Virus record (IMG/VR): IMGVR_UViG_3300029286_000009 | Coordinates: 186,001-250,000 of that record | DNA length: 64,000 nucleotides | Reading direction: 5' to 3' (one strand) | Part shown: in pieces, positions 7,894 through 38,437 of the stretch | Layout of the letters: each line of letters opens with the position of its first letter | Numbering within the stretch: the stretch's first letter is position 1 | Program-made: the position numbers and the translations under genes | Notes under the pieces: generated by a model | Told to the model about the DNA's origin: nothing | Databases searched by the model: none | What the model saw: the letters and a program-made list of their open reading frames with translations, nothing else

Positions 7894-9183
7894 TTAATCT
7901 AACATACTTACTAGCCCTTTTTCCAGAGCTATTTTTCTGTCTATAACTAAAATACCTGTATCACCCATTTTTTTCACCCGAGATTGTTCTTTAATTGCAA
8001 ACTTGGGTATAAATACTTTTTCCCCGTCCACTTCACATAGTAGTGCCTTATTAACTCCTGTGTCTTGGAGCACTCTTACATTATCAATTGTAGCTACTCC
8101 TGTTACGGTTGGAAGCTTATCTGCGTGCCTAAAAGCGTGGCACGTTGCACATAGTGGACGAAAATCTGTCCACAATTCAAAACCTACTCGATCGTATAGC
8201 ATGTGATGTAGGTGCACTGTAGACAGAGAAATTGGACGCAAACAATCCCAACAGCGATCAAACGGACCAGTAGGAGTAATCATGGCAGCTTTTTTGTTGC
8301 ACCACTCTGGCATCTTACGATATTCTTCATAAGATTTTTTTTCAAATCGTTTTACACCCATCACTTGGTTATTGGCTAGTATCTCGGTTATGTTGGTCTC
8401 TATAAATTTTAACTGCCGCCTAATCACGTCTCTTGAATAAAAGAAATACTTTAACACAATAGCATCAATCCGCATATGAAACTGATGATAATCTACAAAC
8501 ATCTGCATAGCTATCGCAAGTGGAACTGGTAAAGACTTTTTTGCTGGTATACCCCATTGTTTGCGATAATTTTCAAAATCAGTGCTATTACGTAGCTGAA
8601 AAGGAAAGTAAAGCGTTAAGACATCTTTGCTCCACCCTTTCCCTATGTATAAGCTTTTAAACCACTCCTTTGTTAGTGGGGTTACCGCAATTTTAGGTTC
8701 TACATAGTTAGACGCGTAGTTATCCCAACGATACTGAATACGAGGATATACCCATTCAGCTGCTCGTGGATCGTCTGCTATGAGTCCTCGGAGCAGTGTT
8801 ATGTCTTCATGGCATAGTTCTTGTTCTTTATCCCACTTACTCTTAAGCTCATATTTACCGCGAGTCATAACCGCAAATAATACATCTTCTGCCCAATCTC
8901 TAAAGGCTTTGGCTCTATCAGTCTTAGCTAGCATTGCTGCTCTTATGACTCCGTGGTAACTGATTACTCGTAGTTCTTGATTGCCTCCAGGTGTCGTCAT
9001 TTTGACGACCCCCTGTTTAGACTTGAATTCATCGGTATTTCTGTCTATTAAACGGTAAAAATTATGCGTGTTTGAATAACCTAGAGCGGCTGCGATGTGG
9101 GACATAACTGCCCACCGGTTTCCTTCGTGGTCATAAATTTCTATTTCTGTGTTTTCAAATTTTACTAATTCTGTATTATTCAT
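7894..9183 (-). CDS. Bro-N domain protein with C-terminal HNH nuclease
   Basis: N-terminal TPGGNQ...ISYHGV...AKAFRDW (Bro-N); C-terminal CWDC...LHH..Y...LCATCH. Confidence 0.8.
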   Translation of the reverse strand: MNNTELVKFENTEIEIYDHEGNRWAVMSHIAAALGYSNTHNFYRLIDRNTDEFKSKQGVVKMTTPGGNQELRVISYHGVIRAAMLAKTDRAKAFRDWAEDVLFAVMTRGKYELKSKWDKEQELCHEDITLLRGLIADDPRAAEWVYPRIQYRWDNYASNYVEPKIAVTPLTKEWFKSLYIGKGWSKDVLTLYFPFQLRNSTDFENYRKQWGIPAKKSLPVPLAIAMQMFVDYHQFHMRIDAIVLKYFFYSRDVIRRQLKFIETNITEILANNQVMGVKRFEKKSYEEYRKMPEWCNKKAAMITPTGPFDRCWDCLRPISLSTVHLHHMLYDRVGFELWTDFRPLCATCHAFRHADKLPTVTGVATIDNVRVLQDTGVNKALLCEVDGEKVFIPKFAIKEQSRVKKMGDTGILVIDRKIALEKGLVSMLD

Positions 9184-12100
9184 ATCTTTCCTTTTATCTC
9201 TTCCAGCAATTCCGTGGGGTTATGCCCATAATATTTGTCATTACGTTCCACATGATCCATTACACTTACAGACCAACGCCCGTGTTCTGCTTTTACACTA
9301 CTGAACAGGAGCATAAACACTACTGTAAGACCACGTTCTTCATTATAAAAAGTCTCTAAGTAAGCATAATCTAAGCCCCGAGAAGCCTTGGCAACATAAC
9401 CTTGTCCAATGATATAAGCGTAAAGTGCATCAAACTCGGGATATGTAATCTGTAAACTAGCAAGGATTTTGTTATGTTGTTGGTCGTCAAATTTATACAT
9501 TTAACTTCTTAACTCCTCGGTAACCCTTCCATGCGGGGAATAATCTTTCAAACTTTTCGATTATTTCTTCTCGGGTATGTTCTTCCACTAATATATACCG
9601 ACCTAGTTGTCCTACTCTTGCCTTCAAGTCGGCGTGTTCTTTAATATACGTATGGATATATTCAGCTTCATTTTTATTCATTATCCTATCTCTGCAATGT
9701 TTCTCTCGAACTCATATACCTGCTCCCAAGTCTTTTGTTCGTTTGTATTCCTCGGTTGATTCTAACACTTTAACCAGGTTTTTATTAAAGCATTCTTGTG
9801 TTTCCCCTAAACCATGCCTGTTTAAAGTATTTATTACCCAATTCATGGCATGAACAAGTGGTCTAAGATCATCTCGGAAGAATCCATCTTCATGTTTAGT
9901 GTAACCTTCGTTTTGTTCTTTTACAAAATCATATCTACGATCGTGTATCTGATCAACACATTCTTGTATAGTGTCGAGCCAATCCAATGTCGCTCTTATA
10001 TTTTCAACCCAATAATCCGGATTTACCCACCCGGATTCAATATCCTCTAAAAGGCATTCCATTCTCGACTGCTGCAAGCTTATACTTTCTACATACTGCC
10101 CGTCTTCTATTTTTTTATCTCCCATAGACAACAACCCTTTATTTTTGTATTTGTCGTTCGCATTTGTGGCATTTCCAATATTTTATTGACATAAAATGGT
10201 CCCCCAAAAAACCGCCATAACCTGGAACAAAATATTTTTTAATTGTATGCATCGAAGTCCCACAATGGTAACATCTAATATGTGGGTTAGCTAGTCTATA
10301 TTCCTTCCATGCCGCACGAGCTTCTGATTCGGTATTGTAACGACGTCCGCCGATTCCCGACTTAAAGACCCGATATATTGCCCATATGCTATCTTTATGA
10401 TACCATATTAAAGAGTGTAAACCATCACCATTATAGAAAGCATGGATTATTTTAAAATAACCCCGTTTGATAGCTTGAGCGTGTCTTATATAGTGGTGGT
10501 TTGGTCCTAACCACTCTACTCCCTGGAATTTACTTTTACTAAAGGGTCTTGTCATTTTTTTTTCTCCTAGTCGTGCCATCCCGAATTAGCACGATTGATG
10601 CCGGGGCCGGGTGTATATGGTCTAGTCTTATCCTTTTTGTTGGTTATACACTTAGCAAGTTCGGGGTCTACTTCAATGCCTATACCGCGAATTAGTTGTG
10701 TTGTACCGCATGCGACACACTGGTGTTGCTGCCACCACCCAGTGCTATCTCCAACATCAGCAATATATTCAAAAACTTTTTGCCCACATTCACAAACCAA
10801 ATCAGCCATTGTCACCTCGCAGTCCTTTAGTGGCGTGTTCCATGAAGTCCCCGCACTCTTTGTGCAGAATCACAAATTGTCCTCTATAAAAAGAGACCCA
10901 ACAATCTTCATCTTCTGCTACTAGTTCATTGCATTTTTCACAGGCACGCTCTAATATGTCTTTTCTTACCAGATCACGTGTTATCAAAGGTCTTCTCCTA
11001 ATGCAAAATAGTCCTCTGGTTTCCCCGCTCGTTCCCAACACCGGTAGAATATATCGGATACTATAGGGACAGGAGTTTTATCATAAGCAATTAAAGCCAC
11101 GTGCTTTCCTTTGTCTTGTGCCCTTTTTATAATTGTGCTTAGAAGGATGTAACCTGCACTATCATCCTCATCATTGGATAAGTCTATATCCAACTGGTCT
11201 AAAAAGTCTGCTAGAATATAGTATGCATAGTCATCTATACTACGTTCAGTCCAATGCGACAATGTCTTCTCCTATTTCTTAATAAAAAACAAGATAGCGA
11301 GAGGTCCTAATGATATACATGCAATAAAAGCATCTACTGCATCAGGACCTATACTGCCCCATTTTTGGTATTCGCGATAACTTATCTGCCCGAAGGCGAA
11401 CAATCCGCACAATATCCAAGTTAGAACGATATAATACATCACGACTTGGGTTCTTCCTCTTTCTTCCTATACACATAACGTGCCAACCAACTGTGTCGGG
11501 GTGTGTTCTCCAAAAAGAATGCCATTATACCCAATACTAGAAGTAGAGAAAATATTCCAAAAAATAGACAGAATACAGCATAAATTAATCCTGAAAGGAT
11601 ATTTCCTACACGTAATCCATTATTTCCGTCGTACATGTTGCGCAGATGTGATAGAAAAAAGATTAAACCTGCTATTCCACCGCAAGTAAACCAAATGGCT
11701 CTAAAGTCCATTATTTTAACTCCTCTATAATTTCCCATTGTTCTGTGGTGCCCCGCCCCACGATTTTATCTAGGTAAGTGCGGGCTTCCTCCAGGGTGGT
11801 CCAATATGTTACTTTATGTCGCTTAATGTCCACATGATACACTAAATAGAATTTAGCATTTTTTTCCACTACCAAAGGGATTGTAAATTCATACAGGTAA
11901 CAATACTCGGATGCACGGTTGCAATAAAGAGATGTAATACCCCTGTAAACGTAACGGTCGCATACGATTTTTAATTCAGGTATTAATTGCAACTTATTTA
12001 TCTTGTAAAGACTATTTGAAATTTTTGACTAACAGGAATCACTGAAGCAGAACACGCGGGGTTTTGACATTTGAATCCGGCATTGTGTCCGTCGATTGTT

Positions 12101-15100
12101 AATCTAAAAAGACTTTTACCACACCATGGGCAGGTTAACAAGATTTTAGATTTTTCGGCTGCGGCTTCTGTGGGTGTGTCATCTAAAATAAGCCACTCAT
12201 TTGCTATATCTGCTCCATTTATACTTATAAAAAACTCCTCTACCGTCTTTGGTTCTTTAGTCATGTTAATTCCTTTATTTGATATTTTTCTGATTCTCGA
12301 GCCCTAACTTCTTGACGTGTGGGTATTTTCCATTCTTTTATACGTTGCGAAAGCCAATGGCATCTGTATTTTTTACAAAAGAAGCACCAGTCACATTCTC
12401 CATAACAAGGTTTCCCCCACAGGTGCACTCGCCACTGGTGTTTCTGCTTAGCTTTGCGCGACATTACTCTACGTTCTGCTCTACTACGCATTGGTGCTCC
12501 TGGGGGTGTTGGAGTGATCGGTAATCACTGAGGACAGGATACCTTTTCGAATAGTCTAGAAAAAGAGACTATCCGGATTAAACTTTAATAACTCAACTAA
12601 CTTAGCCGTTTTTACTTTTAGTTGCTCCACGCATGCTGTCTCTAAACCATGGTCTAAGAAGTAACTAGCTCGGTGCAATGCACTTCCCCGTAAGTTCTTG
12701 TAAACTGATTCATAATTAAAAGGGTATTCCTTCATACACCACAGCTGTAGAACTTCAAGATATTTGTTTATTCCAATCCTGCTGCAATCTTCGTTCGTCA
12801 TTTACCTAGTCTCCTGAGTTTACCCCACCAACGCTGCAACCTCTCCATTATACTTCCTATTACAACTACCGCTAATAGCCACCATGGTATTAAACGTGAT
12901 CTAGTCTTTTTCCTCATCTATCTGACCCCCACCAGTTTCTTCTATGCCTTCTGGTATTACACCAAATGCTTTTTGCCTAAAAGCGATTTGATGACCACAC
13001 TGATCACAGCCCCACCTTCCTGGAATTTCAATGTCACCAGTCATAAAGTTCTTCAACTTCTTCATTTCGCCGCCACAAACTTTGCACTCCATGCTATCCT
13101 CCTACTTATATCTGGGAATTTTGGAAAGGGCTTCTTTTGCTGCTGCCAACTCTTTGTTAGTGCTTTCTACTCTCAATCGCTTATCATAATTCTTAATAGC
13201 CTTACATAATTCTGTTAAATCACCGCCCCAATTACACCCCCAGTAATAATACAAAGCTGATATGAGTTGTATAGAGTTAAATAACCAGCCCATCTTTACG
13301 TCAACACTGAAGGAGATCGCTTCGGTTGTATGCCATGCATTCCTGTAACAGTCCTTAGTCCATGGGATACTGCCCTCTTTAGTCAACTTTGTGAGTTCTC
13401 TGACTATATCAACCACTTCCTGGTTCATTCTCTTTGTCCTTACATCGCATTTCCATGAGTTTTTGCTTTTTTACCTTCTTGTCTTCACATCTTTTCTCAC
13501 TTAACCTTTTTTCTTGGCGAACTACATTTTTATCAACGCTTTTCCAGAGAGTGGCTAGTAAATCTGCTCCCCAAAATAGTTCTTTATACTTTTCGTCATA
13601 ACACCAAAGTATATAAGATACAATACCGAATTCTAAACACACCTTAGTTTGTTCTATTCGTAGTGAGTAACCATTTTTATCCCAGTGTTTTTTCCACAAA
13701 ATCGCATCACATTCGGTTAACTCAATAAGCTTATTTATGAACCTTTCGTCAATTAATGTATTTGTCATTTTTTGCCCGCCTTAATTACTACCCACAGCTC
13801 ACCACTCACTTCATCATATAGCAGGTTCTCATTAGTAAGAGCCATTTTTCTTAGGGTTTCCGCAGAGAAAACTCTCCCATCTTTGTCTACGTCGCCTGCC
13901 TTGAATAACACACCTGTATATGTGGCGTTATCTTCCATATTACTCCTATTTCAACTCCTCAGGTAGGGTTAGTATATCTGCAGGAATCCCTATGGGTGTT
14001 ATTATACACCAAGAGTTATTACAGTACTTACAGTATATACGCGTTTTCTCAGTATCATCTACAAAATAAGGTTTTAGTTCCCGATGTCCCCAGCTGTCTT
14101 GTTTCCAGGTTTGTATCAGACTCCTGAGTATAGTAAGGTCTATTGAGCCGCAATTCGCACACTGGAACAGGGGAAGTCCGTATTTAGATGTACCCATATT
14201 TTTCTATTAACTCCCCACTAGATTTCTTCATTTGCATCGGATAAAGAACTCCGTCTTTTACTAAGTCTACTTCGGCGTAAAAATATCTGTGCTGGATATC
14301 ATACTCCAAGTGTTTAACCACAACTAGATAACCTTGTGCCTCTGCTTCGCTTATTTGCTCTTCGAATATCCTTCTAGCCTTTCTCTGAATAGCATCTTGA
14401 TTATTTTTAAACTGTGTATCTTTCACTTTACACCCGCATCGCTCTAGACATTAGTAACATTTTAAATTCGGTAGCTTTAAACTTCTCGTTACTCCAGCCT
14501 TTTTTCCTATTACTCATATATTCTCGCACATAGCTAGGAAGTAGGAAAGGATTTATCTTAACCGTTGGTAAAACATGTGTAACTACTCCTGTGTCATAAT
14601 CAACAGCCTTGTCAAAATCTCTACTAATAACTACTTCCGGCACGGGTTGAACACCTGTTCTTAAATAGTAGGGTAGTGTACCAGGCACAAATGATTCTAT
14701 TGCCCGGAACAATTCAATAATAGCCCACCCAGTATTGTCGTGTTTAACTAGTATCTCCATCGGTTTAATATACCAGTCTTCTACCTGTTCGTAATAAATG
14801 TCCAGTAGTTCTTGGTAGGTTAGATTTTTAATATCTTCTAGTGATAACTCTTTAGTCGCTGTTACCTTTACTTTTGTCATCTTCTCGTTCCTCATGCTCT
14901 AGGGAAATCTCCTGTGGTGTATGGAGGATCTCCTAGATAATGCCACCCGTCCGGAAACCCCGGATAAGGGTTTGGGTTGGGGCATGGTGGCGGGCAAGGT
15001 GGTGGACAAGGATATAAATACATTGGAGATGTAATATAGGTCTTATTAACTTTGTCCAACCAAGTTAGGCTAGTTATTAAATCTGTCAGTTCTTTGGCTT

Positions 15101-15249: not shown

Positions 15250-16534
15250 GTCAAATACCGCCAGCTAAAGCAGGCGGCTTGTAAGTCGTACTTACGATAG
15301 GCTGTTTGACATCAGCCCGACTTCCAGCGGACATGCCCTTGGAAGCAAGGTAGTTTAGGCGAATATTTTTACTAGCGTTGAGGTCTGCATTGTGTTGAAA
15401 ACCACAAGACTTACATACAAACCAAGACTGGCTCTGCCGGTTCCTTCTCGCTATGTATCCGCAACGGGAACACTTCTGGCTTGTGTATCGAGGATCAACA
15501 TATTCAATCGCAATGCTCCTCATCCTGCCTTTGTAATCCAAGAAAGAACGAAGTCTCTCAAAAGACCAAGAGTGGATTCTTCGCCGTTGTTTTCTTTTCG
15601 CCTTTACTCTGCCTCGAATATCAACAAGATCCTCAAGGACAACGACAGAACCGGGGACAACTGTATCAACTATTCGCCTGGAAATTACGTGGTCACAATC
15701 CTTTCGGAAGCGGTTTTCCTTCTGCGAAAGCTTTTTAAGGTGTCTTTTCGCAGAATCAGTGCCTTTCGATTGGAGAGAGCGTTTGATTCTAAAGTATTTC
15801 TTGGTGGTTTCTTTCCATTGTCGTTCACCAATAAAGTCGGCATTACTGGTGACTGCGGGACGGTTAACTCCGAGGTCAATTCCTACGGTGATGTTCGTGG
15901 GCTCAACAACTGCATCGTCTGTAGAGACAACAACGTGCAAAAAGACTCTTCCGTCTCGCTTGAAGCAGAGGTCAGAGGAGCAGACTTTCCAGGAAAGATA
16001 TCTGCGGTAGTAGTCACAGACTATCAACGTAATGGGGATTCTTCCCTCGACAGAAGAAAGAAAAGCGGTTCCCTTATCAAGTCTAATCGTGGCGGATCTA
16101 GCATCATATCTAACTGTGAGGGCTTTCCCTGTAGGGCAAGAAGCCTTTTTACCTTTTTTCAACTTTGCTTTAGCAGATTTCAGAGCTTCTGTTGCTTTCA
16201 TTCTAGCGGAACACACGAGTTGACTCGGAAGGGACGTGGTTTCTCTTTCAAAACGATAGGTAGCATGGTGCAAATCAACTCCGTTGACCCTTGGGGCTTC
16301 CCATCCTGTTTGACAGACCCTAGCAAAAGACTGCGAAAATTGTTCTGCGGTCTCTTTGAGAGCTTGCAATTTGTCACTTTTAACAGGAAGTTTGAGAGTT
16401 ACGGTTTGCACGTTTGCTCCTTCATATACAAGGTAAAGCATCCGCAACTAAAAGTCAAGGCACAAATACTAAGAAAGGAGGAGCCGGCTTCCTCTGCCGC
16501 CTAAAGACGGCAGTCTCCGCCGGGACAAATCTTT
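15250..16534 (-). mobile_element. IS200/IS605-family TnpB-only (non-autonomous) element
   Basis: Terminal hairpins; plus-strand ends GTCAA at 15250 and ATGA at 16535; interrupts a reconstructable small ORF. Confidence 0.85.
15251..16447 (-). CDS. tnpB: TnpB RNA-guided nuclease
   Basis: RuvC motifs GIDLG, VLEDL and NADLNAS; zinc finger CSRC/CKSC; YTSQKCS. Confidence 0.92.
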   Translation of the reverse strand: MRMLYLVYEGANVQTVTLKLPVKSDKLQALKETAEQFSQSFARVCQTGWEAPRVNGVDLHHATYRFERETTSLPSQLVCSARMKATEALKSAKAKLKKGKKASCPTGKALTVRYDARSATIRLDKGTAFLSSVEGRIPITLIVCDYYRRYLSWKVCSSDLCFKRDGRVFLHVVVSTDDAVVEPTNITVGIDLGVNRPAVTSNADFIGERQWKETTKKYFRIKRSLQSKGTDSAKRHLKKLSQKENRFRKDCDHVISRRIVDTVVPGSVVVLEDLVDIRGRVKAKRKQRRRIHSWSFERLRSFLDYKGRMRSIAIEYVDPRYTSQKCSRCGYIARRNRQSQSWFVCKSCGFQHNADLNASKNIRLNYLASKGMSAGSRADVKQPIVSTTYKPPALAGGI

Positions 16535-29103: not shown

Positions 29104-29621
29104 GGGGCACACAGGTATCGACAGACGTTATGAGTAGATTTGTATTGGTGGTCGGTGTGAGTGGTACCGTAAATCATTCGAATTATAAATGCCGAAGATA
29201 ATTCTTTCGACATGCTCTCAGCTTTTTGTGAAGCCGACCGTAAGGTTAGTGTAGCATACGCTGGTTAATAGGGCGGAGTTCCCAGTAACTTATCAACAGA
29301 AAACTGGGTGGCGGAGGCAAGTGGGTTTTATACCTGCTTCCTCTCCTGGTTACGAGGCTAAACTGACCTGGTGGAGGCACGCGGGAAACCGCGTCCCCTA
29401 AATCCTATGCAAGTAGGTATCCTAGTGTCAGGCATTAGGATAGAGATGGGTAGGGTAATCGCCACCGTGCGGGAAACCAAACCTTCTAGCCCGCAAAAGT
29501 CAGCGGCGGGGTCTCGAAAAGGCTGGCAAACTCTCTGTCGGGAGTATAAATATGGACTACACCATCTAAATTTACATTTCGAAAGGCGGACTGGATCTGG
29601 GTTCGACTCCCAGGTGCTCCA
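29104..29621 (+). ncRNA. ssrA: tmRNA
   Basis: Acceptor stem GGGGCAC/GTGCTCC-A with G3-U70; T-arm CTGGGTTCGACTCCCAG; 5' GGTATCGAC; resume context ATAAAT-GCC at 29191; tag ORF to 29268. Confidence 0.92.
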
Positions 29622-29898
29622 TAAAATTGTCTTATAACAAAGCATTGCTCCCGAAGACATACAAGATTTGTATAATAAACATTGTAATTGGGTCGATGTC
29701 AAAGGTTTTAGGCATCTCCGATCGCCAACTGCGACGTATCCGAAAGATGCATATTAGCTGATCTGCCATGTGTAGAAACAGTAAAGTTAACGTCAACAGT
29801 GCTAGGCGGGGCGTTGATGGTTGATACTAGTCTAGCGGGGGAATAGTTAACGTGACTGTTCCCCCATTTCATATGTAAAGAAGGTAAGGAGAGGTTAA

Positions 29899-31125
29899 AT
29901 GGCGGAAGTTTTGAGTCAAGAAGTAGTTGTATATCAAGAGCATATAGTGGATTTTTATGGAGACCAAATTATATCGATACAGGATGAAAATAATGATGTG
30001 TGGTCTCCTGTAAAGGGATTGTGTGGTGCGATTGGCATCAAAGGTGTCCAAGACCAGATTAACAAAATTAAAAATGACGGGGCCTTCAGATTCAAGGCTA
30101 GCCTTGTAACTGCCCTAGATGGTAAGAATTACTCAACTTTTTGTATTCACGCTGATGATATTCCGATGTGGTTAGCAACAATTGGTACCGGTCGCGTTGA
30201 TGAGAGTGTAAAAAGTAAGTTGATTCTATATAAGAGAGAGTGTGCTAATGTATTGCGGGACTACTGGACTAAGGGTGCTGCTGTAAATCCCCGTTTGGGT
30301 AATCTTGATGTAGACCAGATTAAGAACATTGTTAATGAAGCTCTACAGGTTGCATTGGACGAATACAGACAGGCTAGGACGCCTGAGGAAATTGCTCAAC
30401 TTATCTTTGAGCGAGACGTTGTTATTTTGGCTGAGACGGCGAACCGTGTAGAAAGTCCCTTTCGTGATTCTATTTACAGACGCATCGAAGTGCTTATGGA
30501 CAGTCGTTTTGGTAAACTAGAACCTGCTGAAGAAGCAGAATTAGTAAAGGGACTTACTCCTTTGACCGAGAGCCTATTCCGTAAGCTATATTTGGGGCAG
30601 GGTTGGTGCCGAGATAAACTAGCTCTTTATTTCCCTAAGGAACTGAGTAGCAAGACACAGTTTGACCAGCTCCTAAAGATGTGGGATATTCCAGCACCTA
30701 AAAGGCAGTCTAGAACTTCTATCGCTTTCGCCCGCCGACTTTTGCGAGAAAATCATGTTAATAAGAAGACCATAAATCAGTTGATTACTGAGTTCAATAG
30801 GTCGCGGGAGTCTATTTTGCGGGCTATCAGTGATCAATGGAATTCTTTGAACAAGTCTTTCAAGAAATATTGCACCGCAGGCATAATTCCTAAAGGCAGG
30901 GCTTACAGTGATTATATTGATAGGTCTCCACTTTGGGTAGCCAAGCGTGAAGCTTTTAAGGAGACTTTTGATAATACTTGTTTCTATTGTGGATACCAGT
31001 CCCCTACTGGTATTGCGGTACACCATCTAAACTATATCCGTAGCGGACAAGAACTACCAACAGATTTGGAAATTGTTTGTAACACTTGCCACCAGAAGCG
31101 GCACAAAGAGAAGTATAACGTGTAA
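29899..31125 (+). CDS. P22 antirepressor N-terminal domain plus C-terminal HNH protein
   Basis: V.FYGD.I, LC.AIGI, WL..I, L..YK.EC..VL.DYWTKG.A.NPR; CFYC...HHLNY...CNTCH. Confidence 0.82.
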   Translation: MAEVLSQEVVVYQEHIVDFYGDQIISIQDENNDVWSPVKGLCGAIGIKGVQDQINKIKNDGAFRFKASLVTALDGKNYSTFCIHADDIPMWLATIGTGRVDESVKSKLILYKRECANVLRDYWTKGAAVNPRLGNLDVDQIKNIVNEALQVALDEYRQARTPEEIAQLIFERDVVILAETANRVESPFRDSIYRRIEVLMDSRFGKLEPAEEAELVKGLTPLTESLFRKLYLGQGWCRDKLALYFPKELSSKTQFDQLLKMWDIPAPKRQSRTSIAFARRLLRENHVNKKTINQLITEFNRSRESILRAISDQWNSLNKSFKKYCTAGIIPKGRAYSDYIDRSPLWVAKREAFKETFDNTCFYCGYQSPTGIAVHHLNYIRSGQELPTDLEIVCNTCHQKRHKEKYNV

Positions 31126-31136: not shown

Positions 31137-31766
31137 ATGGACTTTGAAATAGAAGTTAGGTCAGCAGGTGAGCTTTGTGAGAAGCTTCGTAATGTTACGT
31201 TGAGGGGCAGTACAATACCCCCTTATTTGAATTCTTTTATTAGAATTGAAACCTTTAACCCCCGCAATTTATCACCGTGTCAGCGGTACGCTTTATTACC
31301 GGAGCTCAAGAAAATAGAGGAATTGCGGTGGGAAATTCTTAGAGAATACGGGCAAGACATTTTACAGCTAAATGGCTATCTGAAGTGTCACTACCCAGAT
31401 AAGACTATTGACATATTACCGCCGGTCTGTGAGGAGTATGTAACACCTTGGGGTGAGTTGAAAGCCATCATAAACGACGGGTTGCATCGGGTATTTTTAG
31501 CCTATCAGATGGGTATTCCTGTGAACGTTGCTTACATTAGGGGGGTGCATCCGGGTTACCCCTATTACGCGCATATGAATCCCAAAGGATTTGACGACAT
31601 TGAACTTATAGAGGAAATACCGGAGAATTATGTGAAGAAGTTTCATGTTGCCAAAAACCACAAAGAGCTTTTCAGAAATTTCAGTAGTAAATTTGAGAAC
31701 GTAGGGGACTCAAGACCTAGGAAACAAGAGACCTTCCCTGAGGAAGTTTTAAAGCTTTTGGGATAA
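31137..31766 (+). CDS. ParB/Srx-like domain protein
   Basis: IINDGLHR motif preceded by LPP. Confidence 0.45.
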   Translation: MDFEIEVRSAGELCEKLRNVTLRGSTIPPYLNSFIRIETFNPRNLSPCQRYALLPELKKIEELRWEILREYGQDILQLNGYLKCHYPDKTIDILPPVCEEYVTPWGELKAIINDGLHRVFLAYQMGIPVNVAYIRGVHPGYPYYAHMNPKGFDDIELIEEIPENYVKKFHVAKNHKELFRNFSSKFENVGDSRPRKQETFPEEVLKLLG

Positions 31767-31847: not shown

Positions 31848-32918
31848 ATGACAGAACGCTATCAAAATTTGGCTTTGACGTTGCGCCCGCAACAGTTCAA
31901 AAATTTTATTTACAATGATCACATTGTAACGATACTGAAGAACATTGTCACGTCTGGTAAAATTCCGGCAGGTTTGCTCTTCTCTGGCTCGCGGGGACTA
32001 GGGAAGACAACTCTGTCTCGTTTATTTGCCAGAGCAATTAATTGTAATAGCAGAAAAACTGCAGAACCTTGTGGTAAGTGTGAAAGCTGTCAATTATCTA
32101 TGGCACAGAGACATCCTGATATATTAGAAATTAGTGGGTCTACTAACGGGAATATAGAGGATATAAGGCGTATTATAGAGCAGGCTATGCTTACTCCGGC
32201 AATTGGTAACTACAAGGTATTTATTATTGATGAAGCTCAGGGGCTGGGCAGATCTACAGCTTCATGGAATTCACTATTAAAGATTTTAGAAGAGCCGCCC
32301 CCACATGTCGTTTGGTTGTTTTGCACGACTGAAAAGGTCAAGATACCTGAAACGATTAAGTCGAGGTTAATAACGTTAGACTTAAAGTTAATTCCTACCC
32401 CTATAATTGAGAACTACCTTAAGAAGTTGCTTGCTGATGTTAAAGGCGAATCGGTTGCTCCCGTTGTTGCTCGCGTTGCCTGTAATTCTATGCGGGATGC
32501 CCTGACTTTGTTAGAGAAAGTGATATTGTACTGTAAAACCCCCAAGATTGGGTTTACGGAAGCTAACGCATTGATAGCCTTGGGGGCGTTTGACGAAACC
32601 AAGACAGCCTGTATTCTGGATGCCATAAATAGACATGACTGTAAGGATTTGTGGTGTATACTAGAGGGGCTAGTTGATTCGGGGGTGGATTTTGATACTC
32701 TATATAATGATGCCTTAGTCGCAGGAGTTACTAATCTGATGGGAGTAATGTTGGGGGCACAGGTTGATAGAGGGGATTTGTATCAACCTTTTGTACAAAT
32801 GGGCTCTCCTCGTATATTATATTTATCGGACGTGCTGGCACGGCGTAGTAAGCAATTTCATGAGGCTGAAAATAAGAAGTTCGTTCTAAGACTAATAGCG
32901 TTGGAGTTGTGTGCATAA
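31848..32918 (+). CDS. dnaX: DNA polymerase III gamma/tau-like clamp loader
   Basis: LRPQ.F, GSRGLGKTT, PCGKCESC, KVFIIDEA, LLKILEEPP. Confidence 0.92.
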   Translation: MTERYQNLALTLRPQQFKNFIYNDHIVTILKNIVTSGKIPAGLLFSGSRGLGKTTLSRLFARAINCNSRKTAEPCGKCESCQLSMAQRHPDILEISGSTNGNIEDIRRIIEQAMLTPAIGNYKVFIIDEAQGLGRSTASWNSLLKILEEPPPHVVWLFCTTEKVKIPETIKSRLITLDLKLIPTPIIENYLKKLLADVKGESVAPVVARVACNSMRDALTLLEKVILYCKTPKIGFTEANALIALGAFDETKTACILDAINRHDCKDLWCILEGLVDSGVDFDTLYNDALVAGVTNLMGVMLGAQVDRGDLYQPFVQMGSPRILYLSDVLARRSKQFHEAENKKFVLRLIALELCA

Positions 32919-33796
32919 TGTATTTTTCTGATTTTATAAGCAACCCTACCAGGGCTAAGTCTTATTTTCTTTCAGGTAAAGATGATTTCCTGAAAGAATA
33001 TCTGGTGGGATACATTTCTAAGATGCACAATAAGTCAGTTATTCGTTTGGATAAAAAGCAGCCCCCGAAGTATATGGGTAGTTCATTCTTATTCAGGGAG
33101 GAACCTTTGTGGGTAGTTGATCCAGCAACCACTTTCATTCCCGAGGGGCTTGCTATAAAGTTAGGTAATAAAATAACTAAGCCTTATACTAGTGCTGGAT
33201 ATGTAGAGATTGTTTGTAGTTTGACTTTCGATAATCAAATTGAGGACTTTGTAAAGCAATTGGCTTTAGTGGCGGGGCTAAATACTAGTTCAGAGTTCAT
33301 CAAATATATATGTTATCTAAACCAATATGACCCATGTTCTTGCTGTAATACAGTTAACTTGATAAGTTTGCATAAGAACATTTCTTTCGAAGAGATACCA
33401 CTAATTAGTGGTAGTATTGTGAACCCAGATATAACTACTACTGTTAATCATTTTGTAGATGGGAAGTATAGTTACGTCTTAACTGACATTATACAGGCTA
33501 AGGTTGACTCTAGATTGCTTTGTTTCATTCTAGCAGATACGATTGCACGTGCCATGGATACAGTTGGGGTGGTGAAACCTACGTGGATGCAAAGGCGTTT
33601 ACTGCAGCTCTGGTCTAAGTTAGAACCACTAAATGTAGGTATTATTCTGTCTACTCTAAATTCAATCCATAGAGATATCTTGTCTCCCACAGCAGTCATA
33701 CGATCGCGTCTAGTTTATTTAGTGGCGTATATTGGGGGATGGTCAAATATTAACATAGGAGATGTCAATAGAAATAATGGATATTACGAAGAATGA
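32909..33796 (+). CDS. Probable clamp loader delta-like subunit
   Basis: Overlaps dnaX; N-terminal YFLSGKDDFLK resembles HolA. Confidence 0.45.
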   Translation: MCIMYFSDFISNPTRAKSYFLSGKDDFLKEYLVGYISKMHNKSVIRLDKKQPPKYMGSSFLFREEPLWVVDPATTFIPEGLAIKLGNKITKPYTSAGYVEIVCSLTFDNQIEDFVKQLALVAGLNTSSEFIKYICYLNQYDPCSCCNTVNLISLHKNISFEEIPLISGSIVNPDITTTVNHFVDGKYSYVLTDIIQAKVDSRLLCFILADTIARAMDTVGVVKPTWMQRRLLQLWSKLEPLNVGIILSTLNSIHRDILSPTAVIRSRLVYLVAYIGGWSNINIGDVNRNNGYYEE

Positions 33797-34603
33797 TAGG
33801 GCTTTCTATACTGCCGCTATAGACTTTGTGACTGAAAACCTTGAGATAGTAAACAATTTTGTTGCTCTAAATGGGTTGTCGGGGTCGTTGGGCCAGGATT
33901 TGTCTGACGTGGTCATAATAGGCATCAAGAAGTGGCTAACGAGTCCAGAAGGTGAGGGTTGGTTGGGTACCTTAGGATATAAACGTTCTGGTAAACCTGA
34001 AAAGACTTATTTAGATCGGGTATGTCCAGTTTGTAGCGGAATACATATGCGGTATGCTAATGTAAGATGTGAGCGGTGTGGGCGCTATATGTGCCATCCT
34101 TGTACGTCTGTAGTTGATTCTAGATATCATATCATATGGTGTGACCATTGTATCGCAGACGTGGCGTTAATAAACTTTCCTAGTAGCATTAGAGAATACT
34201 AGTTTTTTTATTTAGGAGGCTTATAATGGCAAGAGAGTGGGAGGAGACCCCAGAAGCTGACAATCTGGATTATGATGACAACCCCTACATTTCTCCGGGT
34301 GATAATGCTTCTCGTCGGTATTGGGCACGTGAAGCATGGTTATACCGCCCAGAAGACTTAGAGGAGCATGACAGTCGCCGTGGGACTGACCGGAGGTATA
34401 TGCGTGGTATGAACAAATATTTGCGAGACGAACTTCGTTTGCGAAATAATACTGAGGGGTTGGTTTGATGAAGAAAACAGGTAAATTTTTTCAGAAAATG
34501 TTAGGGGATATACATAACGAAACTTGTATGTGTCGGCGTTGTCGTGCTAGGGTAGATGCTATGGAAAGGCGTCCCATACGCTTAGACTCAATACGGAACT
34601 GGG

Positions 34604-35353
34604 ATGATGTTAGGGAAATTACCGAAGTTACAGAAGAATATAACGAATAGTCAAAATTTACGAGAGGCTGGACGTGTCCTACGGGACGCGTTCAACCTCA
34701 TCTTAACGTATGTCCAGCCGGGGGTCTCCTTGCAGGATATAGACTTTCGTGTAGAGAAATTCTTACGTCAAAACCACGCCTTGTCCACGCCCCGTCTCCT
34801 CAATTTTCCTTACCAGTTTTCGGCATCCATTAATTATGAAGTAGTAAATGGATACCCAGATGATAGGTGTGTGGTAGCAGGCGATATAATATCAATAGAT
34901 ATGGGCATTTTTTGTAGGGGTGTGTTTGTGGATAAAGCGGTGTCTGTTGCATTTCCTCCAGTTAGTGGTAAAGTAGCTTACTTACTTAAAGCCGCACAAG
35001 ACTGCTTAGATGTAGGAATACGGTCTTCTGCAGCGGGAGCTAATAATAAGATTATAGGGAAGATGATAGAAATGACAGCGAATTATTACGGAATGTCTAC
35101 ATCTCCTCGCTTCTCTGGGCATGCTATAGGTGAGGAGCCACATATGTATCCTTTAATACCCAATGTGGCTAACGCTGCGGTTGAGGAGGTTATACTGAGA
35201 GAAGGGCAGAGTATTACGATTGAACCCATAGTATTCTATGGCAGTTCTCATTCTATCGATTCTTCAAAACATCTTATTATTTCTGACTCAATAAGTGCTC
35301 ACTTTGAAGAGACTATAATTATTCATAGTAACCATGTTGAGGTTGTGACATGA
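34604..35353 (+). CDS. map: Methionine aminopeptidase (M24)
   Basis: GDIISIDMG, D, GHAIG..H, TIEP, SAHFEET. Confidence 0.88.
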   Translation: MMLGKLPKLQKNITNSQNLREAGRVLRDAFNLILTYVQPGVSLQDIDFRVEKFLRQNHALSTPRLLNFPYQFSASINYEVVNGYPDDRCVVAGDIISIDMGIFCRGVFVDKAVSVAFPPVSGKVAYLLKAAQDCLDVGIRSSAAGANNKIIGKMIEMTANYYGMSTSPRFSGHAIGEEPHMYPLIPNVANAAVEEVILREGQSITIEPIVFYGSSHSIDSSKHLIISDSISAHFEETIIIHSNHVEVVT

Positions 35354-35682
35354 AAGAACTTCTATTTGTTATATGTGCTTATTCACTGGCAAGTATACTA
35401 GTTGAACAAGGTATTTTTAAAGAGCCCCGCGAATGGCTAAAATCTTGTGTGGCAGACAATTCTAACTGGTTGCTACGCAAGTTTTGTGCTTTAATCCGTT
35501 GTATGTGGTGTGCGGGGGTATGGTGCGGATTTATACTATGTTGGATGGGGTTTAATATAGTAGATATAAATCACTGGGATTTTTTCTTTTGTGGGCTGAT
35601 AAGCGGTTTTACTACGTATTTAATTCATCAATTTATGTTGCGTTTAGATATATATTTGAAAGAATTTGGGATTGAGTCTTAA
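35350..35682 (+). CDS. DUF1360-like membrane protein
   Basis: IF...R and LI.C.WC.GVW within hydrophobic helices. Confidence 0.6.
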   Translation: MKELLFVICAYSLASILVEQGIFKEPREWLKSCVADNSNWLLRKFCALIRCMWCAGVWCGFILCWMGFNIVDINHWDFFFCGLISGFTTYLIHQFMLRLDIYLKEFGIES

Positions 35683-35700
35683 TTGGCTCTCTGACAGGGA

Positions 35701-36165
35701 ATGTTAATCGTGACCTATTGGGACGATGAGGATAATAGAAAGGTATTAAGGGAAGAAAAACTGCGTGAAAAGCGGGGGCTCCTTGTTAAATCTGCTCCTC
35801 CACCAGTTGAGTCAGCTATAGATAAAGAACATTTAGATAAGGTTCTTGCTATCTTAGAGCAACAAATGCAATTGACTGCCGCACAAACACAGCAGCTGAA
35901 CGAATTGCATCAAGCATTAGATAACCAAGGGCAGGTTTTATCTAAGCTTTTAGAAAAAGAACCTGTTGTTATAACAGAAGGTGGCATTACAAAAACTGTA
36001 AAGAGGGCTTCCGAAGAATTGCCTATTCTTGGTGATATTGATGTAAATGTTGTGGATACTTCAGGTATCGAGACACAGGGGGAGGCAGGAGAGCAAAAAA
36101 CAGAGGGCAATAGCGTAAAAGACCGTGTAGCTAGACTACGGGAATTAAAGAACAAGGGGAAATAA
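35701..36165 (+). CDS. Coiled-coil hypothetical protein
   Basis: Q/L/E-rich heptads; directly upstream of the actin-like gene. Confidence 0.55.
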   Translation: MLIVTYWDDEDNRKVLREEKLREKRGLLVKSAPPPVESAIDKEHLDKVLAILEQQMQLTAAQTQQLNELHQALDNQGQVLSKLLEKEPVVITEGGITKTVKRASEELPILGDIDVNVVDTSGIETQGEAGEQKTEGNSVKDRVARLRELKNKGK

Positions 36166-36167
36166 AG

Positions 36168-37223
36168 ATGGAGCAAAATCAGGAATTACTTAAAGAAATA
36201 CCGGTATCTATTTCTTATCTTTCAGGAATCGGAGTCGATATTGGAACTAGCTTTCTTCAAGTAGCGAGAGAGAGAACAGATGGCAAGGTTGAGTTTGTGT
36301 CTGAAAGGGACGCTTTCTATGCGATTAAACCCACGTCGGCGGTATCCGCAAAATTTATTGAAAAATCTCTTGTTCAGAAGGGGGCTTTTGTCTTAAAATC
36401 TGATGGCATCTTTTATGTAGTGGGTAGAGAGGCGATTGCTACAGCGATAGAAAGGGGTGGCTCGGTGGAGAGACCACTAAAGAAGGGTGTCCTTAGTATG
36501 AAGGATAAAGATGCAATGGGAATGCTTGCGGTTTTGCTTAAGTCGCTTGTCAAAGAAGCTCAAACCCCAGGAGAAATATGTGTTTATTCCTATCCGGCTG
36601 ACCCGTTAGACCAGTCGTTTGATGTAGTATATCATCAACATAGGATGGGAGAAATTCTAGGTAAAATGGGGTATAAAGCTGTACCACTGTTGGAATCAGA
36701 AGCTTTAGCGTACAGTGAGCTTATGGATGAAGATTTAACCGGAATTGCGGTTTCATGCGGTGCTGGTATGTTTAATTTTGCGTGTTTTTCAGTTGGACAG
36801 TGTCTTCTTAGCTTCAGTATAGCCCAAGGTGGTGATTACATTGATAAATCTGTAGCTAAACCTCTAGACATTTCGGAGACCGAAGTGCAGGCGGAAAAGG
36901 AAAGTCCAACTATGGATTTGAATAATCCTAAAGGACAGATACAAGAAACTATAGTGATGTATTATGACAATTTAATCAAATATGTTTGTGATGTCTTAGA
37001 AAAGAAGATTGGGCAGTTCGATGAAATGCCTAAATTCACTAAGCCTATAACTATAGTTATATCTGGAGGCACTAGTCTTCCTAAGGGCTTTATGGAAAAG
37101 ATGTCTGTTGCACTTTTATCTAAAAATTTTCCATTTACGATTGGCAACATAAAACGTGCAGGAGATCCGCTCACGGCAGTTGCGAATGGTTGTTTAATAT
37201 TTTCTCAAATGATGAGAGAATAA
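36168..37223 (+). CDS. Actin-like (MreB/FtsA/ASKHA) ATPase
   Basis: GVDIGTS, E.EA.A, CGAG, GGDYID, ISGGTS, P..AVA.G. Confidence 0.85.
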   Translation: MEQNQELLKEIPVSISYLSGIGVDIGTSFLQVARERTDGKVEFVSERDAFYAIKPTSAVSAKFIEKSLVQKGAFVLKSDGIFYVVGREAIATAIERGGSVERPLKKGVLSMKDKDAMGMLAVLLKSLVKEAQTPGEICVYSYPADPLDQSFDVVYHQHRMGEILGKMGYKAVPLLESEALAYSELMDEDLTGIAVSCGAGMFNFACFSVGQCLLSFSIAQGGDYIDKSVAKPLDISETEVQAEKESPTMDLNNPKGQIQETIVMYYDNLIKYVCDVLEKKIGQFDEMPKFTKPITIVISGGTSLPKGFMEKMSVALLSKNFPFTIGNIKRAGDPLTAVANGCLIFSQMMRE

Positions 37224-37240
37224 TCTTTAAGTAAAAAGGA

Positions 37241-38437
37241 ATGGAAAAAATGGGAAAGGAAATAGTAACAAAGGAATTTAATTTTATGGAAGACACTATT
37301 GTGGCGGTTGACCAAAACGATGTGTGGTATATTTCTCCACGACATATTTGTGAAAATGTAGGATTAGATTGGGCTTCTCAGAGTAGAAAAATTGAGAAGG
37401 AGTCTGAGAAGTTCAACCGTTGTCTTATGACAACAGTTGGTCACGATGGTAAACTGCGTGAAATGGTTATGATACCTGTGACACGTATAAATACATGGAT
37501 ATTGAGTATCAATGCAAAGCGTGTCAAAAACTTAAGAGTAAGAGCATATCTACGGAAATACCAAGATCAGCTATCCGATTGGTTGTATGAAGCGGGATTT
37601 CTAGGAGCGGCGGTAAATAAGGATGTGTTGTTACTCCCTGCGGAACGACAGGTGGAAGTATTGGGAGATGCTCTTCACAGAGCTCGCTTGCAAAGTGAAC
37701 CATTGAATGAGTATCAAGAGAAGATAGCGACCATTTTAGGTTTACCTGACTTAGAAGGGATGGATAAATATAAGACTCAGCGTCTGCAGATGTTGACAGA
37801 TGTTAAATTAGGTGTTGCTAGTCCTTTGTTCTCAAAAGGTTTGCGGGGAGTAGTAAGACTAACTGATGAACTATTTTACATCGCTTATATGATAGAAAGG
37901 TGGTGTGTTGATAAGCTGATTTGCTGTTTTCCACAAGACTTGCCCACGCCTGTGGCGATAGAGCAATATATAAGAGATAAAGGTTATTGTGAACCTTGGG
38001 TGGTTAAACCCATTAGGCACGCAGATGCACGAAGGGTGGTTAAGCTTAATACTCTGTTTAGCTATAGTATTTCTGATTTAATAATACGATTTAATAAACC
38101 AGCTGAATTGATACACAATGCTATGTTTAGAGTAGTAAAAGATATGGAGGATGTATTTACTGCGACTGAAGTTAAACTGGAACTTCCAGCCATAAGAGAC
38201 AGAGCCAGTATGTCAGCTAGGCGGGAGCAGTATATGAAAACGGCTGAGTGGTGGGATAAGCGAAACGCTTTTTTCAAAGTTTTCAATTGTTGTGTAGTTT
38301 GTGGGGATATGGAGGTTGCATCTTCGCGATTTGAGGCACACCACTTGCACTATGATACATTAGGATTTGAGTCACCTTGGGATTTAGTGCCCTTGTGTAA
38401 AGATTGTCATACTAAGGTAGAAGGAAGGAGTAGGTGA
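37241..38437 (+). CDS. P22 antirepressor N-terminal domain plus C-terminal HNH protein
   Basis: ICENVGLDWASQ..K, DGKLREM, WILSIN..RVK; CVVC...HHLHY...LCKDCH. Confidence 0.82.
   Translation: MEKMGKEIVTKEFNFMEDTIVAVDQNDVWYISPRHICENVGLDWASQSRKIEKESEKFNRCLMTTVGHDGKLREMVMIPVTRINTWILSINAKRVKNLRVRAYLRKYQDQLSDWLYEAGFLGAAVNKDVLLLPAERQVEVLGDALHRARLQSEPLNEYQEKIATILGLPDLEGMDKYKTQRLQMLTDVKLGVASPLFSKGLRGVVRLTDELFYIAYMIERWCVDKLICCFPQDLPTPVAIEQYIRDKGYCEPWVVKPIRHADARRVVKLNTLFSYSISDLIIRFNKPAELIHNAMFRVVKDMEDVFTATEVKLELPAIRDRASMSARREQYMKTAEWWDKRNAFFKVFNCCVVCGDMEVASSRFEAHHLHYDTLGFESPWDLVPLCKDCHTKVEGRSR

What the first reader, a model, noticed from the sequence alone, without database searches (positions are those of the whole stretch)
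7894..38437. Three-member family: swappable antirepressor/Bro N-terminus, unknown middle domain, HNH
Seen: 7894..9183 (Bro-N), 29899..31125 and 37241..38437 (both P22 Ant-N) share a middle block (TPLTKEWFKSLYIGKGWSKDVLTLYFP / TPLTESLFRKLYLGQGWCRDKLALYFP / VRLTDELFYIAYMIERWCVDKLICCFP) and an HNH with Y....W..K...C..C...HH..Y...G.E...D...C..CH. I do not recognise the middle domain. Inference: a mobile homing-endonuclease-like family that captured DNA-binding antirepressor domains, or nucleases aimed at competing prophages.
Basis: partly seen in the sequence, partly recalled or inferred. Interest (0 to 1): 0.6.

Follow-up and report, generated by a model that had tools for sequence, protein, structure and literature searches.

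The report
Jumbo-phage homing endonuclease family
Three divergent genes in this roughly 260-kb phage genome belong to a rare family of selfish, self-inserting DNA-cutting enzymes built from an antirepressor-type DNA-binding head, a pair of helix-turn-helix motifs and an HNH nuclease; this is a new domain combination of a well-known kind of mobile gene, not a new kind of system.

Summary
ORFs 7894..9183(-), 29899..31125(+) and 37241..38437(+) are paralogues. They are 25-36% identical outside the N-terminus, with pairwise E from 1e-26 to 8e-11. One has a Bro-N head and two have a P22_AR_N head. All three have an intact C-terminal HNH.

The "unknown" middle block is not in Pfam, but it folds confidently (pLDDT 92) into two three-helix helix-turn-helix sub-domains. 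It is therefore a bipartite DNA-binding module, not a new fold.

A profile search of 1.84 billion proteins finds only about 18 real clusters. Nearly all share this architecture, and those traced come from phage-like metagenome contigs.

In four related phage lineages with the same gene order, the volactin/orf92 junction is 14-30 nt. In this phage it is 1219 nt and holds the third gene. The slot after the phage tmRNA that holds the second gene is empty in one relative and holds LAGLIDADG endonucleases in two others.

One family member is a chimera: its head matches the second gene and its body matches the first. That shows the heads are exchanged by recombination.

Best reading: free-standing HNH homing endonucleases (confidence about 0.75). 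No cleavage has been shown. The locus of the first gene could not be tested.

The parts
7894..9183 (-). ORF1 (P0001, 429 aa): Bro-N head, helical linker, tandem HTH, HNH, and a C-terminal extension of about 70 aa
   Evidence: ORF; Pfam; family alignment; belongs to the Bro clade of the tree, support 99/99
8875..9144 (-). ORF1 Bro-N domain (residues 14-103)
   Evidence: Pfam PF02498, E 8e-12; PHROG anti-repressor families, E down to 1e-20
8335..8688 (-). ORF1 middle block (residues 166-283), the tandem HTH by homology to ORF2
   Evidence: BLASTP; alignment
8119..8334 (-). ORF1 HNH module (residues 284-355): C311, C314, H326, H327, D340, C345, C348, H349
   Evidence: Alignment; Pfam HNH, E 0.13; PHROG 8060, E 5.5e-6
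7897..8118 (-). ORF1 C-terminal extension (residues 356-429). It is conserved in the Bro clade and in P0016. Probably a small beta-barrel.
   Evidence: Alignment; PHROG 8389, E 4e-4; ESM Atlas structural neighbours are orphan phage proteins, TM 0.76-0.87. This is a lead only.
29899..31125 (+). ORF2 (P0002, 408 aa): P22_AR_N head, helical linker, tandem HTH, HNH
   Evidence: ORF; Pfam; AlphaFold model, pLDDT 82
29947..30282 (+). ORF2 P22_AR_N domain (residues 17-128)
   Evidence: Pfam PF10547, E 9e-26; BFVD matches to Ant-N and Bro-N proteins
30283..30549 (+). ORF2 helical linker (residues 129-217): long helices with lower model confidence
   Evidence: Model (pLDDT 52-83)
30550..30882 (+). ORF2 tandem helix-turn-helix (residues 218-328). 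Sub-domain 1 has helices 224-233, 238-244 and 252-261. Sub-domain 2 has helices 275-286, 292-299 and 303-323.
   Evidence: Models (pLDDT 92, pTM 0.80). Sub-domain 2 matches sigma-70 region 4, KorA and DeoR HTHs at Z 6-8.1, rmsd 1-2 A. All ten Atlas rows are HTH families; three span both halves and two match sub-domain 1 alone.
30898..31122 (+). ORF2 HNH module (residues 334-408): two leading helices, then a beta-beta-alpha core with C361, C364, H375, H376, D389, C394, C397, H398
   Evidence: Pfam HNH, E 2e-4, 21.9 bits against a cut-off of 21.4; model; closest solved sequence is the HNH of type I-E HNH Cascade, 8yb6 (E 1.7e-4)
37241..38437 (+). ORF3 (P0003, 398 aa): P22_AR_N head, linker, tandem HTH, HNH. 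It is inserted between volactin and orf92.
   Evidence: ORF; Pfam; junction sequences; gap of 1219 nt against 14-30 nt in relatives
37277..37591 (+). ORF3 P22_AR_N domain (residues 13-117)
   Evidence: Pfam E 2.6e-25
37847..38200 (+). ORF3 middle block (residues 203-320), the tandem HTH by homology
   Evidence: BLASTP; alignment
38213..38434 (+). ORF3 HNH module (residues 325-398). The last His of the helix is replaced (TKVE), as in its whole clade.
   Evidence: Pfam HNH, E 9e-4; alignment

Best explanation
The three genes are free-standing (intergenic) HNH homing endonuclease genes of one rare family, which so far looks confined to phages.

Each protein has three parts:
- A KilA-N/Bro-type DNA-binding head (Bro-N or P22_AR_N) at the N-terminus.
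- A long helical linker followed by a bipartite helix-turn-helix pair. Together with the head this gives a long, composite recognition site.
- A zinc-stabilised beta-beta-alpha-metal HNH nuclease at the C-terminus.

[quoted passage not shown] Recombinational repair from the gene-carrying genome then copies the gene and its flanks across. This is intronless homing with marker exclusion.

The three copies are not recent duplicates. Each belongs to a different clade and is closer to genes from other metagenomes than to its paralogues in this genome. The heads are exchanged between family members by recombination, which would retarget the enzyme.

What is shown: the architecture, the folds, intact catalytic residues, rarity, insertion polymorphism at two of three loci, and head exchange. 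What is inferred: cleavage, target sites and homing itself.
For: Architecture and folds:
- Domains. Models with pLDDT 82 and 92.
- HTH assignment.
- HNH core invariant in 19 members. It is most similar among solved chains to the HNH of type I-E HNH Cascade.

Insertion polymorphism:
- L008/L009, L010, L016 and L017 keep the order M24, orf154, volactin, orf92, orf97, orf175, orf209, terL. Their volactin-to-orf92 gaps are 14-30 nt against 1219 nt here.
- The junction sequences show the ORF dropped into a spacer of about 5 nt.

Alternative occupancy of the slot between tmRNA and ParB-CE:
- ORF2 in this phage.
- A 275-aa LAGLIDADG-like ORF in L010.
- A 319-aa LAGLIDADG_3 plus HTH_23 ORF in L017.
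- Only a small ORF in L016.

Mobility:
- None of about 80 volactin loci from other phages has a family member within 10 kb.
- Homologues P0005, P0006, P0007, P0010, P0011 and P0016 lie in unrelated contexts. P0007 sits beside an HNH_2 gene and a P22_AR_N plus MUG113 gene.

Head exchange:
- The P0016 head is 48% identical to the ORF2 head (E 1e-43). Its body is 35-36% identical to P0013 and ORF1 (E 1e-53 to 1e-57) and only 25% identical to ORF2.
- On the tree P0016 falls inside the Bro clade, support 99/99.

Literature:
- Free-standing homing endonucleases are defined by intergenic position between conserved genes. In T4, segB lies in the tRNA gene region (PMC2988022).
- Homing endonucleases carry DNA-binding domains at one end and the nuclease at the other, and they shuffle domains (PMC10448857).
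- Bro-N and KilA-N heads are known on GIY-YIG/T5orf172 homing endonucleases (PMC8096241).
Against: - No biochemical evidence of cleavage exists, and no target site has been identified.
- The nearest relatives are only about 50-75% identical in flanking proteins. No co-conversion tract or recent homing event can therefore be seen.
- The ORF1 locus could not be tested, because its flanking gene has no relatives in 5.8 billion proteins.
- Pfam HNH scores are marginal.
- The ORF3 clade lacks the last His of the canonical motif.
- GC content equals the genome's, so the insertions are not recent imports from a distant source.
- The domain order (DNA-binding at the N-terminus, HNH at the C-terminus) is the reverse of T4 Mob and I-HmuI.
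Confidence: 0.75

Rival explanations
1. Domesticated or weaponised nucleases. The proteins no longer home. The phage keeps them to cut the DNA of competing phages, prophages or satellites that its DNA-binding heads recognise, as with Odn and Gp5 of ICP1.
For: Domestication of homing endonucleases in phage-satellite conflicts is documented (PMC10448857; PMC8096241). The three genes have host-like GC content and intact catalytic residues. ORF3's 3' end carries the ribosome-binding site of the downstream gene, which favours retention.
Against: No target element is known. Presence/absence and replacement by LAGLIDADG genes at the same slot is the pattern of selfish turnover, not of a retained function. 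PADLOC gives nothing beyond weak HNH or N-domain matches. This reading overlaps with marker exclusion by ordinary homing.
Confidence: 0.15
2. Transcription regulators of the antirepressor/Bro type. The heads and HTH pair bind DNA or a repressor to control gene expression, and the HNH is a structural zinc module without nuclease activity.
For: PHROGs and BFVD label the N-domains as anti-repressor or Bro. The protein has three DNA-binding modules. The PLE protein CapR shows that relatives of homing endonucleases can become regulators.
Against: The P22_AR_C repressor-binding half is absent. The general-base His and all zinc cysteines are invariant across 19 members. The genes are dispensable in relatives.
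Confidence: 0.05
3. An HNH cofactor of the terminase for genome packaging (HK97 gp74 type), at least for ORF3, which lies 3 kb upstream of terL.
For: ORF3 lies close to the terminase gene at 41627..43399.
Against: Four related lineages with the same packaging module and a terL 49-56% identical lack any such gene. The other two copies are far from terL. The protein is four times the size of such cofactors and carries three DNA-binding modules.
Confidence: 0.03

Closest known systems
Free-standing HNH homing endonucleases of T-even phages (MobA-E; I-HmuI-like enzymes)
   Same: They are intergenic ORFs between genes conserved in related phages, and they are sporadically present. They combine an HNH nuclease with separate DNA-binding modules, including HTH. 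Different endonuclease families can replace each other at one site (PMC2988022).
   Different: The domain order is reversed: here the HNH is C-terminal. The DNA-binding part is a Bro-N or P22_AR_N head plus a divergent HTH pair, not NUMOD or IENR motifs. The HNH is of the zinc-finger CxxC...HH...CxxCH type, closest to the Cascade-fused HNH.
Bro-N/KilA-N plus T5orf172 (GIY-YIG-like) homing endonucleases of ICP1, T5-like and other phages
   Same: They have an N-terminal Bro/KilA-type DNA-binding head fused to a C-terminal nuclease, they are multi-copy in one phage genome, and their domains shuffle (PMC8096241; PMC10448857). A P22_AR_N plus MUG113 gene lies directly beside family member P0007.
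   Different: Here the nuclease is HNH, not GIY-YIG/T5orf172. There is also an extra bipartite HTH between the head and the nuclease.
P22 Ant antirepressor and Bro proteins
   Same: They share an N-terminal domain homologous to P22_AR_N or Bro-N.
   Different: There is no P22_AR_C, ORF6C or other antirepressor C-terminal half. The protein has a nuclease instead and is not in an immunity region.
LAGLIDADG plus HTH free-standing endonucleases in the sister phages (L010 3858-4685; L017 3566-4525)
   Same: They occupy the same slot downstream of the phage tmRNA and carry HTH DNA-binding motifs. The Atlas fold search also pairs the middle domain with LAGLIDADG_3 plus HTH_23 proteins.
   Different: The nuclease fold is unrelated and there is no sequence similarity.

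Membership tests
Free-standing homing endonuclease (HNH class) | HNH beta-beta-alpha-metal nuclease domain with catalytic and zinc residues intact | tested here: met
   Pfam HNH, E 2e-4 to 0.13. C361, C364, H375, H376 and C394 are invariant; D389, C397 and H398 are at least 90% conserved in 19 members. The model shows two strands and a helix at residues 372-401. Profile match to the HNH of 8yb6.
Free-standing homing endonuclease (HNH class) | Separate sequence-reading DNA-binding module or modules | tested here: met
   Bro-N or P22_AR_N head and a tandem HTH. DNA binding itself was not assayed.
Free-standing homing endonuclease (HNH class) | The ORF lies between genes that are conserved and adjacent in related genomes, with sporadic presence | tested here: met
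   ORF3: relatives L008/L009, L010, L016 and L017 have gaps of 14-30 nt against 1219 nt here. ORF2: the slot is empty in L016 and holds LAGLIDADG genes in L010 and L017. ORF1: not testable, as no relatives of the flanking gene were found.
Free-standing homing endonuclease (HNH class) | Site-specific cleavage of the gene-less allele, followed by gene conversion | not testable with these tools
   This needs an enzyme assay and a homing assay.
P22 Ant-type antirepressor | P22_AR_N together with the C-terminal antirepressor half (P22_AR_C or equivalent) | tested here: not met
   Only the N-domain matches. The C-terminal two thirds are an HTH pair plus HNH.
Bro-N/KilA-N plus T5orf172 homing endonucleases | C-terminal T5orf172/GIY-YIG nuclease domain | tested here: not met
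   No GIY-YIG, T5orf172 or MUG113 match in any of the three genes or in 10 further members.
Terminase-associated HNH (HK97 gp74 type) | A small HNH protein conserved next to the terminase genes of all related phages | tested here: not met
   Absent from relatives that have the same packaging module.
T4 Mob / I-HmuI HNH endonucleases | N-terminal HNH followed by C-terminal NUMOD/HTH DNA-binding region | tested here: not met
   The order is reversed here, and no NUMOD match is found in the three proteins.

The most novel reading that the evidence does not exclude
The family is a naturally modular, three-part DNA-reading nuclease. Its head (Bro-N or P22_AR_N) is exchanged between members by recombination, and this retargets cleavage. 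That would explain how one jumbo-phage lineage has seeded many different intergenic sites. One of these sites is a hot spot just downstream of the phage tmRNA, where HNH and LAGLIDADG elements displace each other. If each module reads its own sub-site, the family would be a new scaffold for studying how homing endonucleases acquire new targets.
Probability: 0.35. Interest if true: 0.45.

Novelty: new variant of a known kind. Interest (0 to 1): 0.3.

Why it matters
The finding adds a previously uncatalogued architecture to the repertoire of phage homing endonucleases: a KilA-N/Bro-type head, a divergent bipartite HTH and a C-terminal zinc-finger HNH. It also gives a clean natural example of head swapping within one family.

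This uncultured jumbo phage is heavily colonised by mobile nucleases. The 64-kb window holds three members of this family, at least one LAGLIDADG gene, an IscB with its guide RNA and a TnpB. That matters for annotation: these genes would otherwise be labelled "antirepressor". It also matters for understanding mosaicism in huge phages.

It does not reveal a new biological principle.

Tried and rejected
- Megablast of 10 kb against cultured phages: no match.
- tblastn of ORF2 against cultured phages: only the N-domain matches Ant proteins. The C-terminal half matches only the HNH of Streptomyces phages.
- Word-index protein search with the C-terminal half: found only itself. That is why the exhaustive profile search was used. 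Two of its 20 hits, P0015 and P0020, are repeat proteins and were discarded.
- Single-protein and first alignment scans of IMG/VR returned only a near-identical copy of the same phage.
- Foldseek against the PDB gave nothing at E <= 0.001, with either the full model or the middle model.
- A profile of the middle block against PDB sequences gave nothing below E 0.2.
- No Pfam family covers the middle block in 13 members examined.
- hhalign of the middle block against the canonical HTH pair of the L017 LAGLIDADG protein: no similarity. Sub-domain 1 against sub-domain 2: not significant. The HTH assignment therefore rests on structure, not sequence.
- I considered that the long tmRNA (521 nt) next to ORF2 holds an intron with ORF2 as its endonuclease. 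I rejected this because Rfam finds no intron and the ORF lies 275 nt beyond the tmRNA 3' end. The relatives' tmRNAs are 393-507 nt, with the extra length inside the pseudoknot region.
- ORF1 locus: the downstream flanking gene has no homologue outside this phage. All contigs that carry it also carry ORF1, so presence/absence is untested there.
- NCBIfam and PADLOC gave only sub-threshold HNH-type matches.
- The reads tools, complex prediction and alternative genetic codes were not needed and were not used.


Full report
**Observation.** The three ORFs are at exactly the coordinates given: 7894..9183 on the minus strand (429 aa, P0001), 29899..31125 (408 aa, P0002) and 37241..38437 (398 aa, P0003). 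Pfam finds Bro-N in the first (E 8e-12) and P22_AR_N in the other two (E 9e-26 and 3e-25). All three have a weak C-terminal HNH match (E 0.13, 2e-4, 9e-4). PHROGs gives anti-repressor families for the heads and HNH endonuclease families for the tails. With the heads removed, the proteins still align at E 1e-26, 9e-23 and 8e-11. The middle block alone aligns at 3e-19, 2e-15 and 5e-5.

**Genome.** The window is bases 186001-250000 of a 259,732-bp IMG/VR virus record rated 96% complete. Searching that whole record finds only these three members; the one other weak HNH match lies inside an IscB gene. The same phage also occurs on contigs of up to 320 kb in other samples. No cultured phage resembles it at the DNA level.

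**Rarity of the family.** The word-index search found only the query itself and Pfam left the middle block unassigned. I therefore ran the exhaustive profile search, using the middle block of the three paralogues. Among 1.84 billion representative proteins it found 20 hits at E <= 1e-3. Two are repeat proteins and were discarded. The remaining 18 include the window's own genes. Nearly all are 380-470 aa with the middle block at about residues 160-330, and they carry P22_AR_N (13 members) or Bro-N (5 members) at the N-terminus with an HNH at the C-terminus.

In the 19-sequence alignment (P0002 numbering) the residues Y339, W346, C361, C364, H375, H376, Y379, G383, E385 and C394 are invariant. 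K349, D389, C397 and H398 are nearly invariant. This set is a CxxC/CxxC zinc site plus the His-His strand of a beta-beta-alpha-metal nuclease. The closest solved sequence is the HNH domain fused to Cas5 in type I-E HNH Cascade, 8yb6 (E 1.7e-4).

**The middle domain.** No Pfam model covers it in any member examined. A profile of it finds nothing in PDB sequences. With the family alignment, AlphaFold models it very confidently: pLDDT 90-97 inside the full-length model, and pLDDT 92 with pTM 0.80 on its own. It consists of two three-helix units.

- The second unit (P0002 residues 274-328) superposes on sigma-70 region 4, KorA, DeoR, LuxR-type and Tc3 helix-turn-helix domains at Z 6-8.1 and rmsd 1-2 A over about 50 residues. 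The hit list is uniformly HTH.
- In the ESM Atlas shape search all ten rows are HTH families. Three rows span both units (85-94 residues aligned, TM 0.47-0.52; HTH_1, HTH_23, HTH_28). Two rows match the first unit alone (IS30-type HTH_38/HTH_23). One row is a LAGLIDADG_3 plus HTH_23 endonuclease cluster.
- Foldseek against the PDB was not significant, but it listed bipartite HTH domains such as SETMAR, Tc3 and CENP-B.

I conclude that the middle domain is a divergent bipartite HTH DNA-binding module. It is uncatalogued by sequence but is not a new fold. The assignment for the first unit is weaker than for the second. Sequence-profile comparisons with canonical HTH pairs, and between the two units, were negative.

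**Presence and absence in relatives.** Homologues of the neighbouring actin-like gene (Pfam Volactin) led to related phage contigs. Four lineages keep the gene order M24 peptidase, orf154, volactin, orf92, orf97, orf175, orf209, large terminase. They are L008/L009 (volactin 74% identical), L010 (75%), L016 (64%) and L017 (50%). In all of them volactin is followed by orf92 after 14-30 nt. In this phage the gap is 1219 nt and is filled by P0003. The junction sequences show the ORF sitting in what is a spacer of about 5 nt in L008. The ribosome-binding site of orf92 now lies inside the 3' end of P0003.

P0002 lies between a phage tmRNA (Rfam, 29104..29624) and a ParB-CE gene. The same tmRNA-to-ParB-CE slot differs among relatives:

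- L010 holds a 275-aa ORF with a classic LAGLIDADG motif and an HTH.
- L017 holds a 319-aa LAGLIDADG_3 plus HTH_23 ORF and a small ORF.
- L016 holds only the small ORF.

The two LAGLIDADG ORFs are related to each other (29% identity, E 1e-19) but not to P0002. The 275-nt spacer before P0002 contains a short reading frame that resembles the C-terminal HTH of the L017 enzyme (12 of 22 residues, E about 1). This is only a hint of a decayed predecessor.

None of about 80 volactin-bearing loci from other phages has a family member within 10 kb. The P0001 locus could not be tested, because its flanking gene has no relatives.

**Mobility and head exchange.** Family members from other samples sit in unrelated contexts:

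- P0005 (57% identical to P0003) lies upstream of a RecA-like gene.
- P0010 lies upstream of a metallophosphatase gene.
- P0016 lies at the end of an array of small ORFs.
- P0007 lies next to an HNH_2 gene and a P22_AR_N plus MUG113 (GIY-YIG-like) gene.

P0007, P0011, P0016 and the 138-kb relative all come from one sample, which suggests the family has expanded in this phage lineage.

A maximum-likelihood tree of the middle-plus-HNH region places the three window genes in three different clades, so they are not recent duplicates. The Bro clade has 99/99 support and contains P0016, whose head is of the P22_AR_N type. That head is 48% identical to the head of P0002 (E 1e-43). Its body is 35-36% identical to P0013 and P0001 (E 1e-53 to 1e-57) and only 25% identical to P0002.

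**Interpretation.** The defining traits of free-standing phage homing endonucleases are intergenic position between conserved genes, sporadic presence, replacement by other endonuclease families at the same site, and DNA-binding modules at one end with the nuclease at the other (PMC2988022; PMC10448857). Those that can be tested computationally are met. Bro-N and KilA-N heads are already known on GIY-YIG/T5orf172 homing endonucleases (PMC8096241). Here the same kind of head is joined, through a bipartite HTH, to an HNH nuclease.

The most likely mechanism is cleavage of the empty allele of a co-infecting relative, followed by copying of the gene during recombinational repair. Cleavage, the target sites and homing are all inferred. 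A plausible guess is that the targets lie in the conserved neighbours: the tmRNA 3' region or ParB-CE for P0002, and the volactin 3' end or orf92 for P0003.

The rival readings are less well supported. They are a domesticated anti-competitor nuclease, a regulator with an inactive HNH, and a terminase cofactor. The reasons are the turnover pattern at these sites, the invariant catalytic residues, and the absence of these genes from relatives that share the same packaging module.

**Comparison and novelty.** BFVD holds no viral protein model that covers the whole architecture; it gives only head matches and one HNH match. The ESM Atlas has no large cluster with this architecture. This is a new domain architecture within a known kind of element, so I rate it as a new variant of a known kind, of modest interest.

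Noticed in passing
window 29104..29624 (+); also L010 3303-3695, L016 3750-4252, L017 3017-3523: A phage-encoded tmRNA (Rfam RF00023, 61.9 bits) is conserved at the same position in the related jumbo phages. Its length varies from 393 to 521 nt, and the extra sequence lies in the central pseudoknot region. ARAGORN predicts a tag peptide. The slot just downstream of it is a hot spot for endonuclease genes.
   Followed up: partly
window 38993..39205 (+) and 39227..40435 (+): A HEARO/omega RNA (Rfam RF02033, 111 bits) is followed by an IscB gene (RRXRR, E 8e-62, plus HNH). This is an RNA-guided nuclease element in a phage genome. It is inserted between orf97 and orf175, which are 10-43 nt apart in relatives L008, L010, L016 and L017. 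It lies 556 nt downstream of ORF3.
   Followed up: partly
window 15251..16447 (-): A TnpB-like gene (OrfB_IS605, E 4e-11, plus Cas12f1-like TNB, E 2e-22). This is a second OMEGA-type nuclease in the same window. Its GC content, like IscB's, is 45-46% against 41% for the window.
   Followed up: no
window 45411..46229 (+): A 272-aa ORF with weak LAGLIDADG_3 and HTH matches lies between the 671-aa and 514-aa structural genes downstream of the terminase. It is absent from L008, L009 and L016, where those two genes are adjacent. L017 has a homologue at the same site (34% identity). This is another free-standing homing endonucleases gene. ORF 60083..60640 shows related similarity (30% identity to the L017 copy).
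   Followed up: partly
window 29687..29743 (+), within the spacer 29625..29898: A short frame ending in a stop resembles the C-terminal HTH of the LAGLIDADG endonuclease that occupies this slot in L017 (12 of 22 residues identical, E about 1). It may be a relic of an earlier occupant displaced by ORF2.
   Followed up: partly
window 29837..29865 (+): A 13-bp GC-rich hairpin followed by a T-rich tail lies 34 nt upstream of the ORF2 start. It could be the tmRNA terminator or a translational control element for ORF2.
   Followed up: no
window 36168..37223 (+), 31137..31766 (+), 40464..40991 (+): Three conserved genes stand out. One is an actin-like Volactin-family gene (E 3e-59) with hundreds of homologues on large phage contigs. 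One is a ParB-CE gene. One is a 175-aa protein with a NUMOD3 motif just upstream of the terminase, which may be a small terminase or DNA-binding packaging factor.
   Followed up: no
window 7897..8118 (-), ORF1 residues 356-429: A C-terminal extension is conserved in the Bro clade and in P0016. Its structural neighbours in the ESM Atlas are orphan phage proteins of 65-129 aa (TM 0.76-0.87) and OB/TOBE-like barrels. Its function is unknown.
   Followed up: partly
L010 1481-2002: The relative L010 carries a 173-aa HNH_5 endonuclease gene between the Cpn10-like gene and the HU-like gene. This site is empty in the window's phage, so each lineage has its own set of endonuclease insertions.
   Followed up: no
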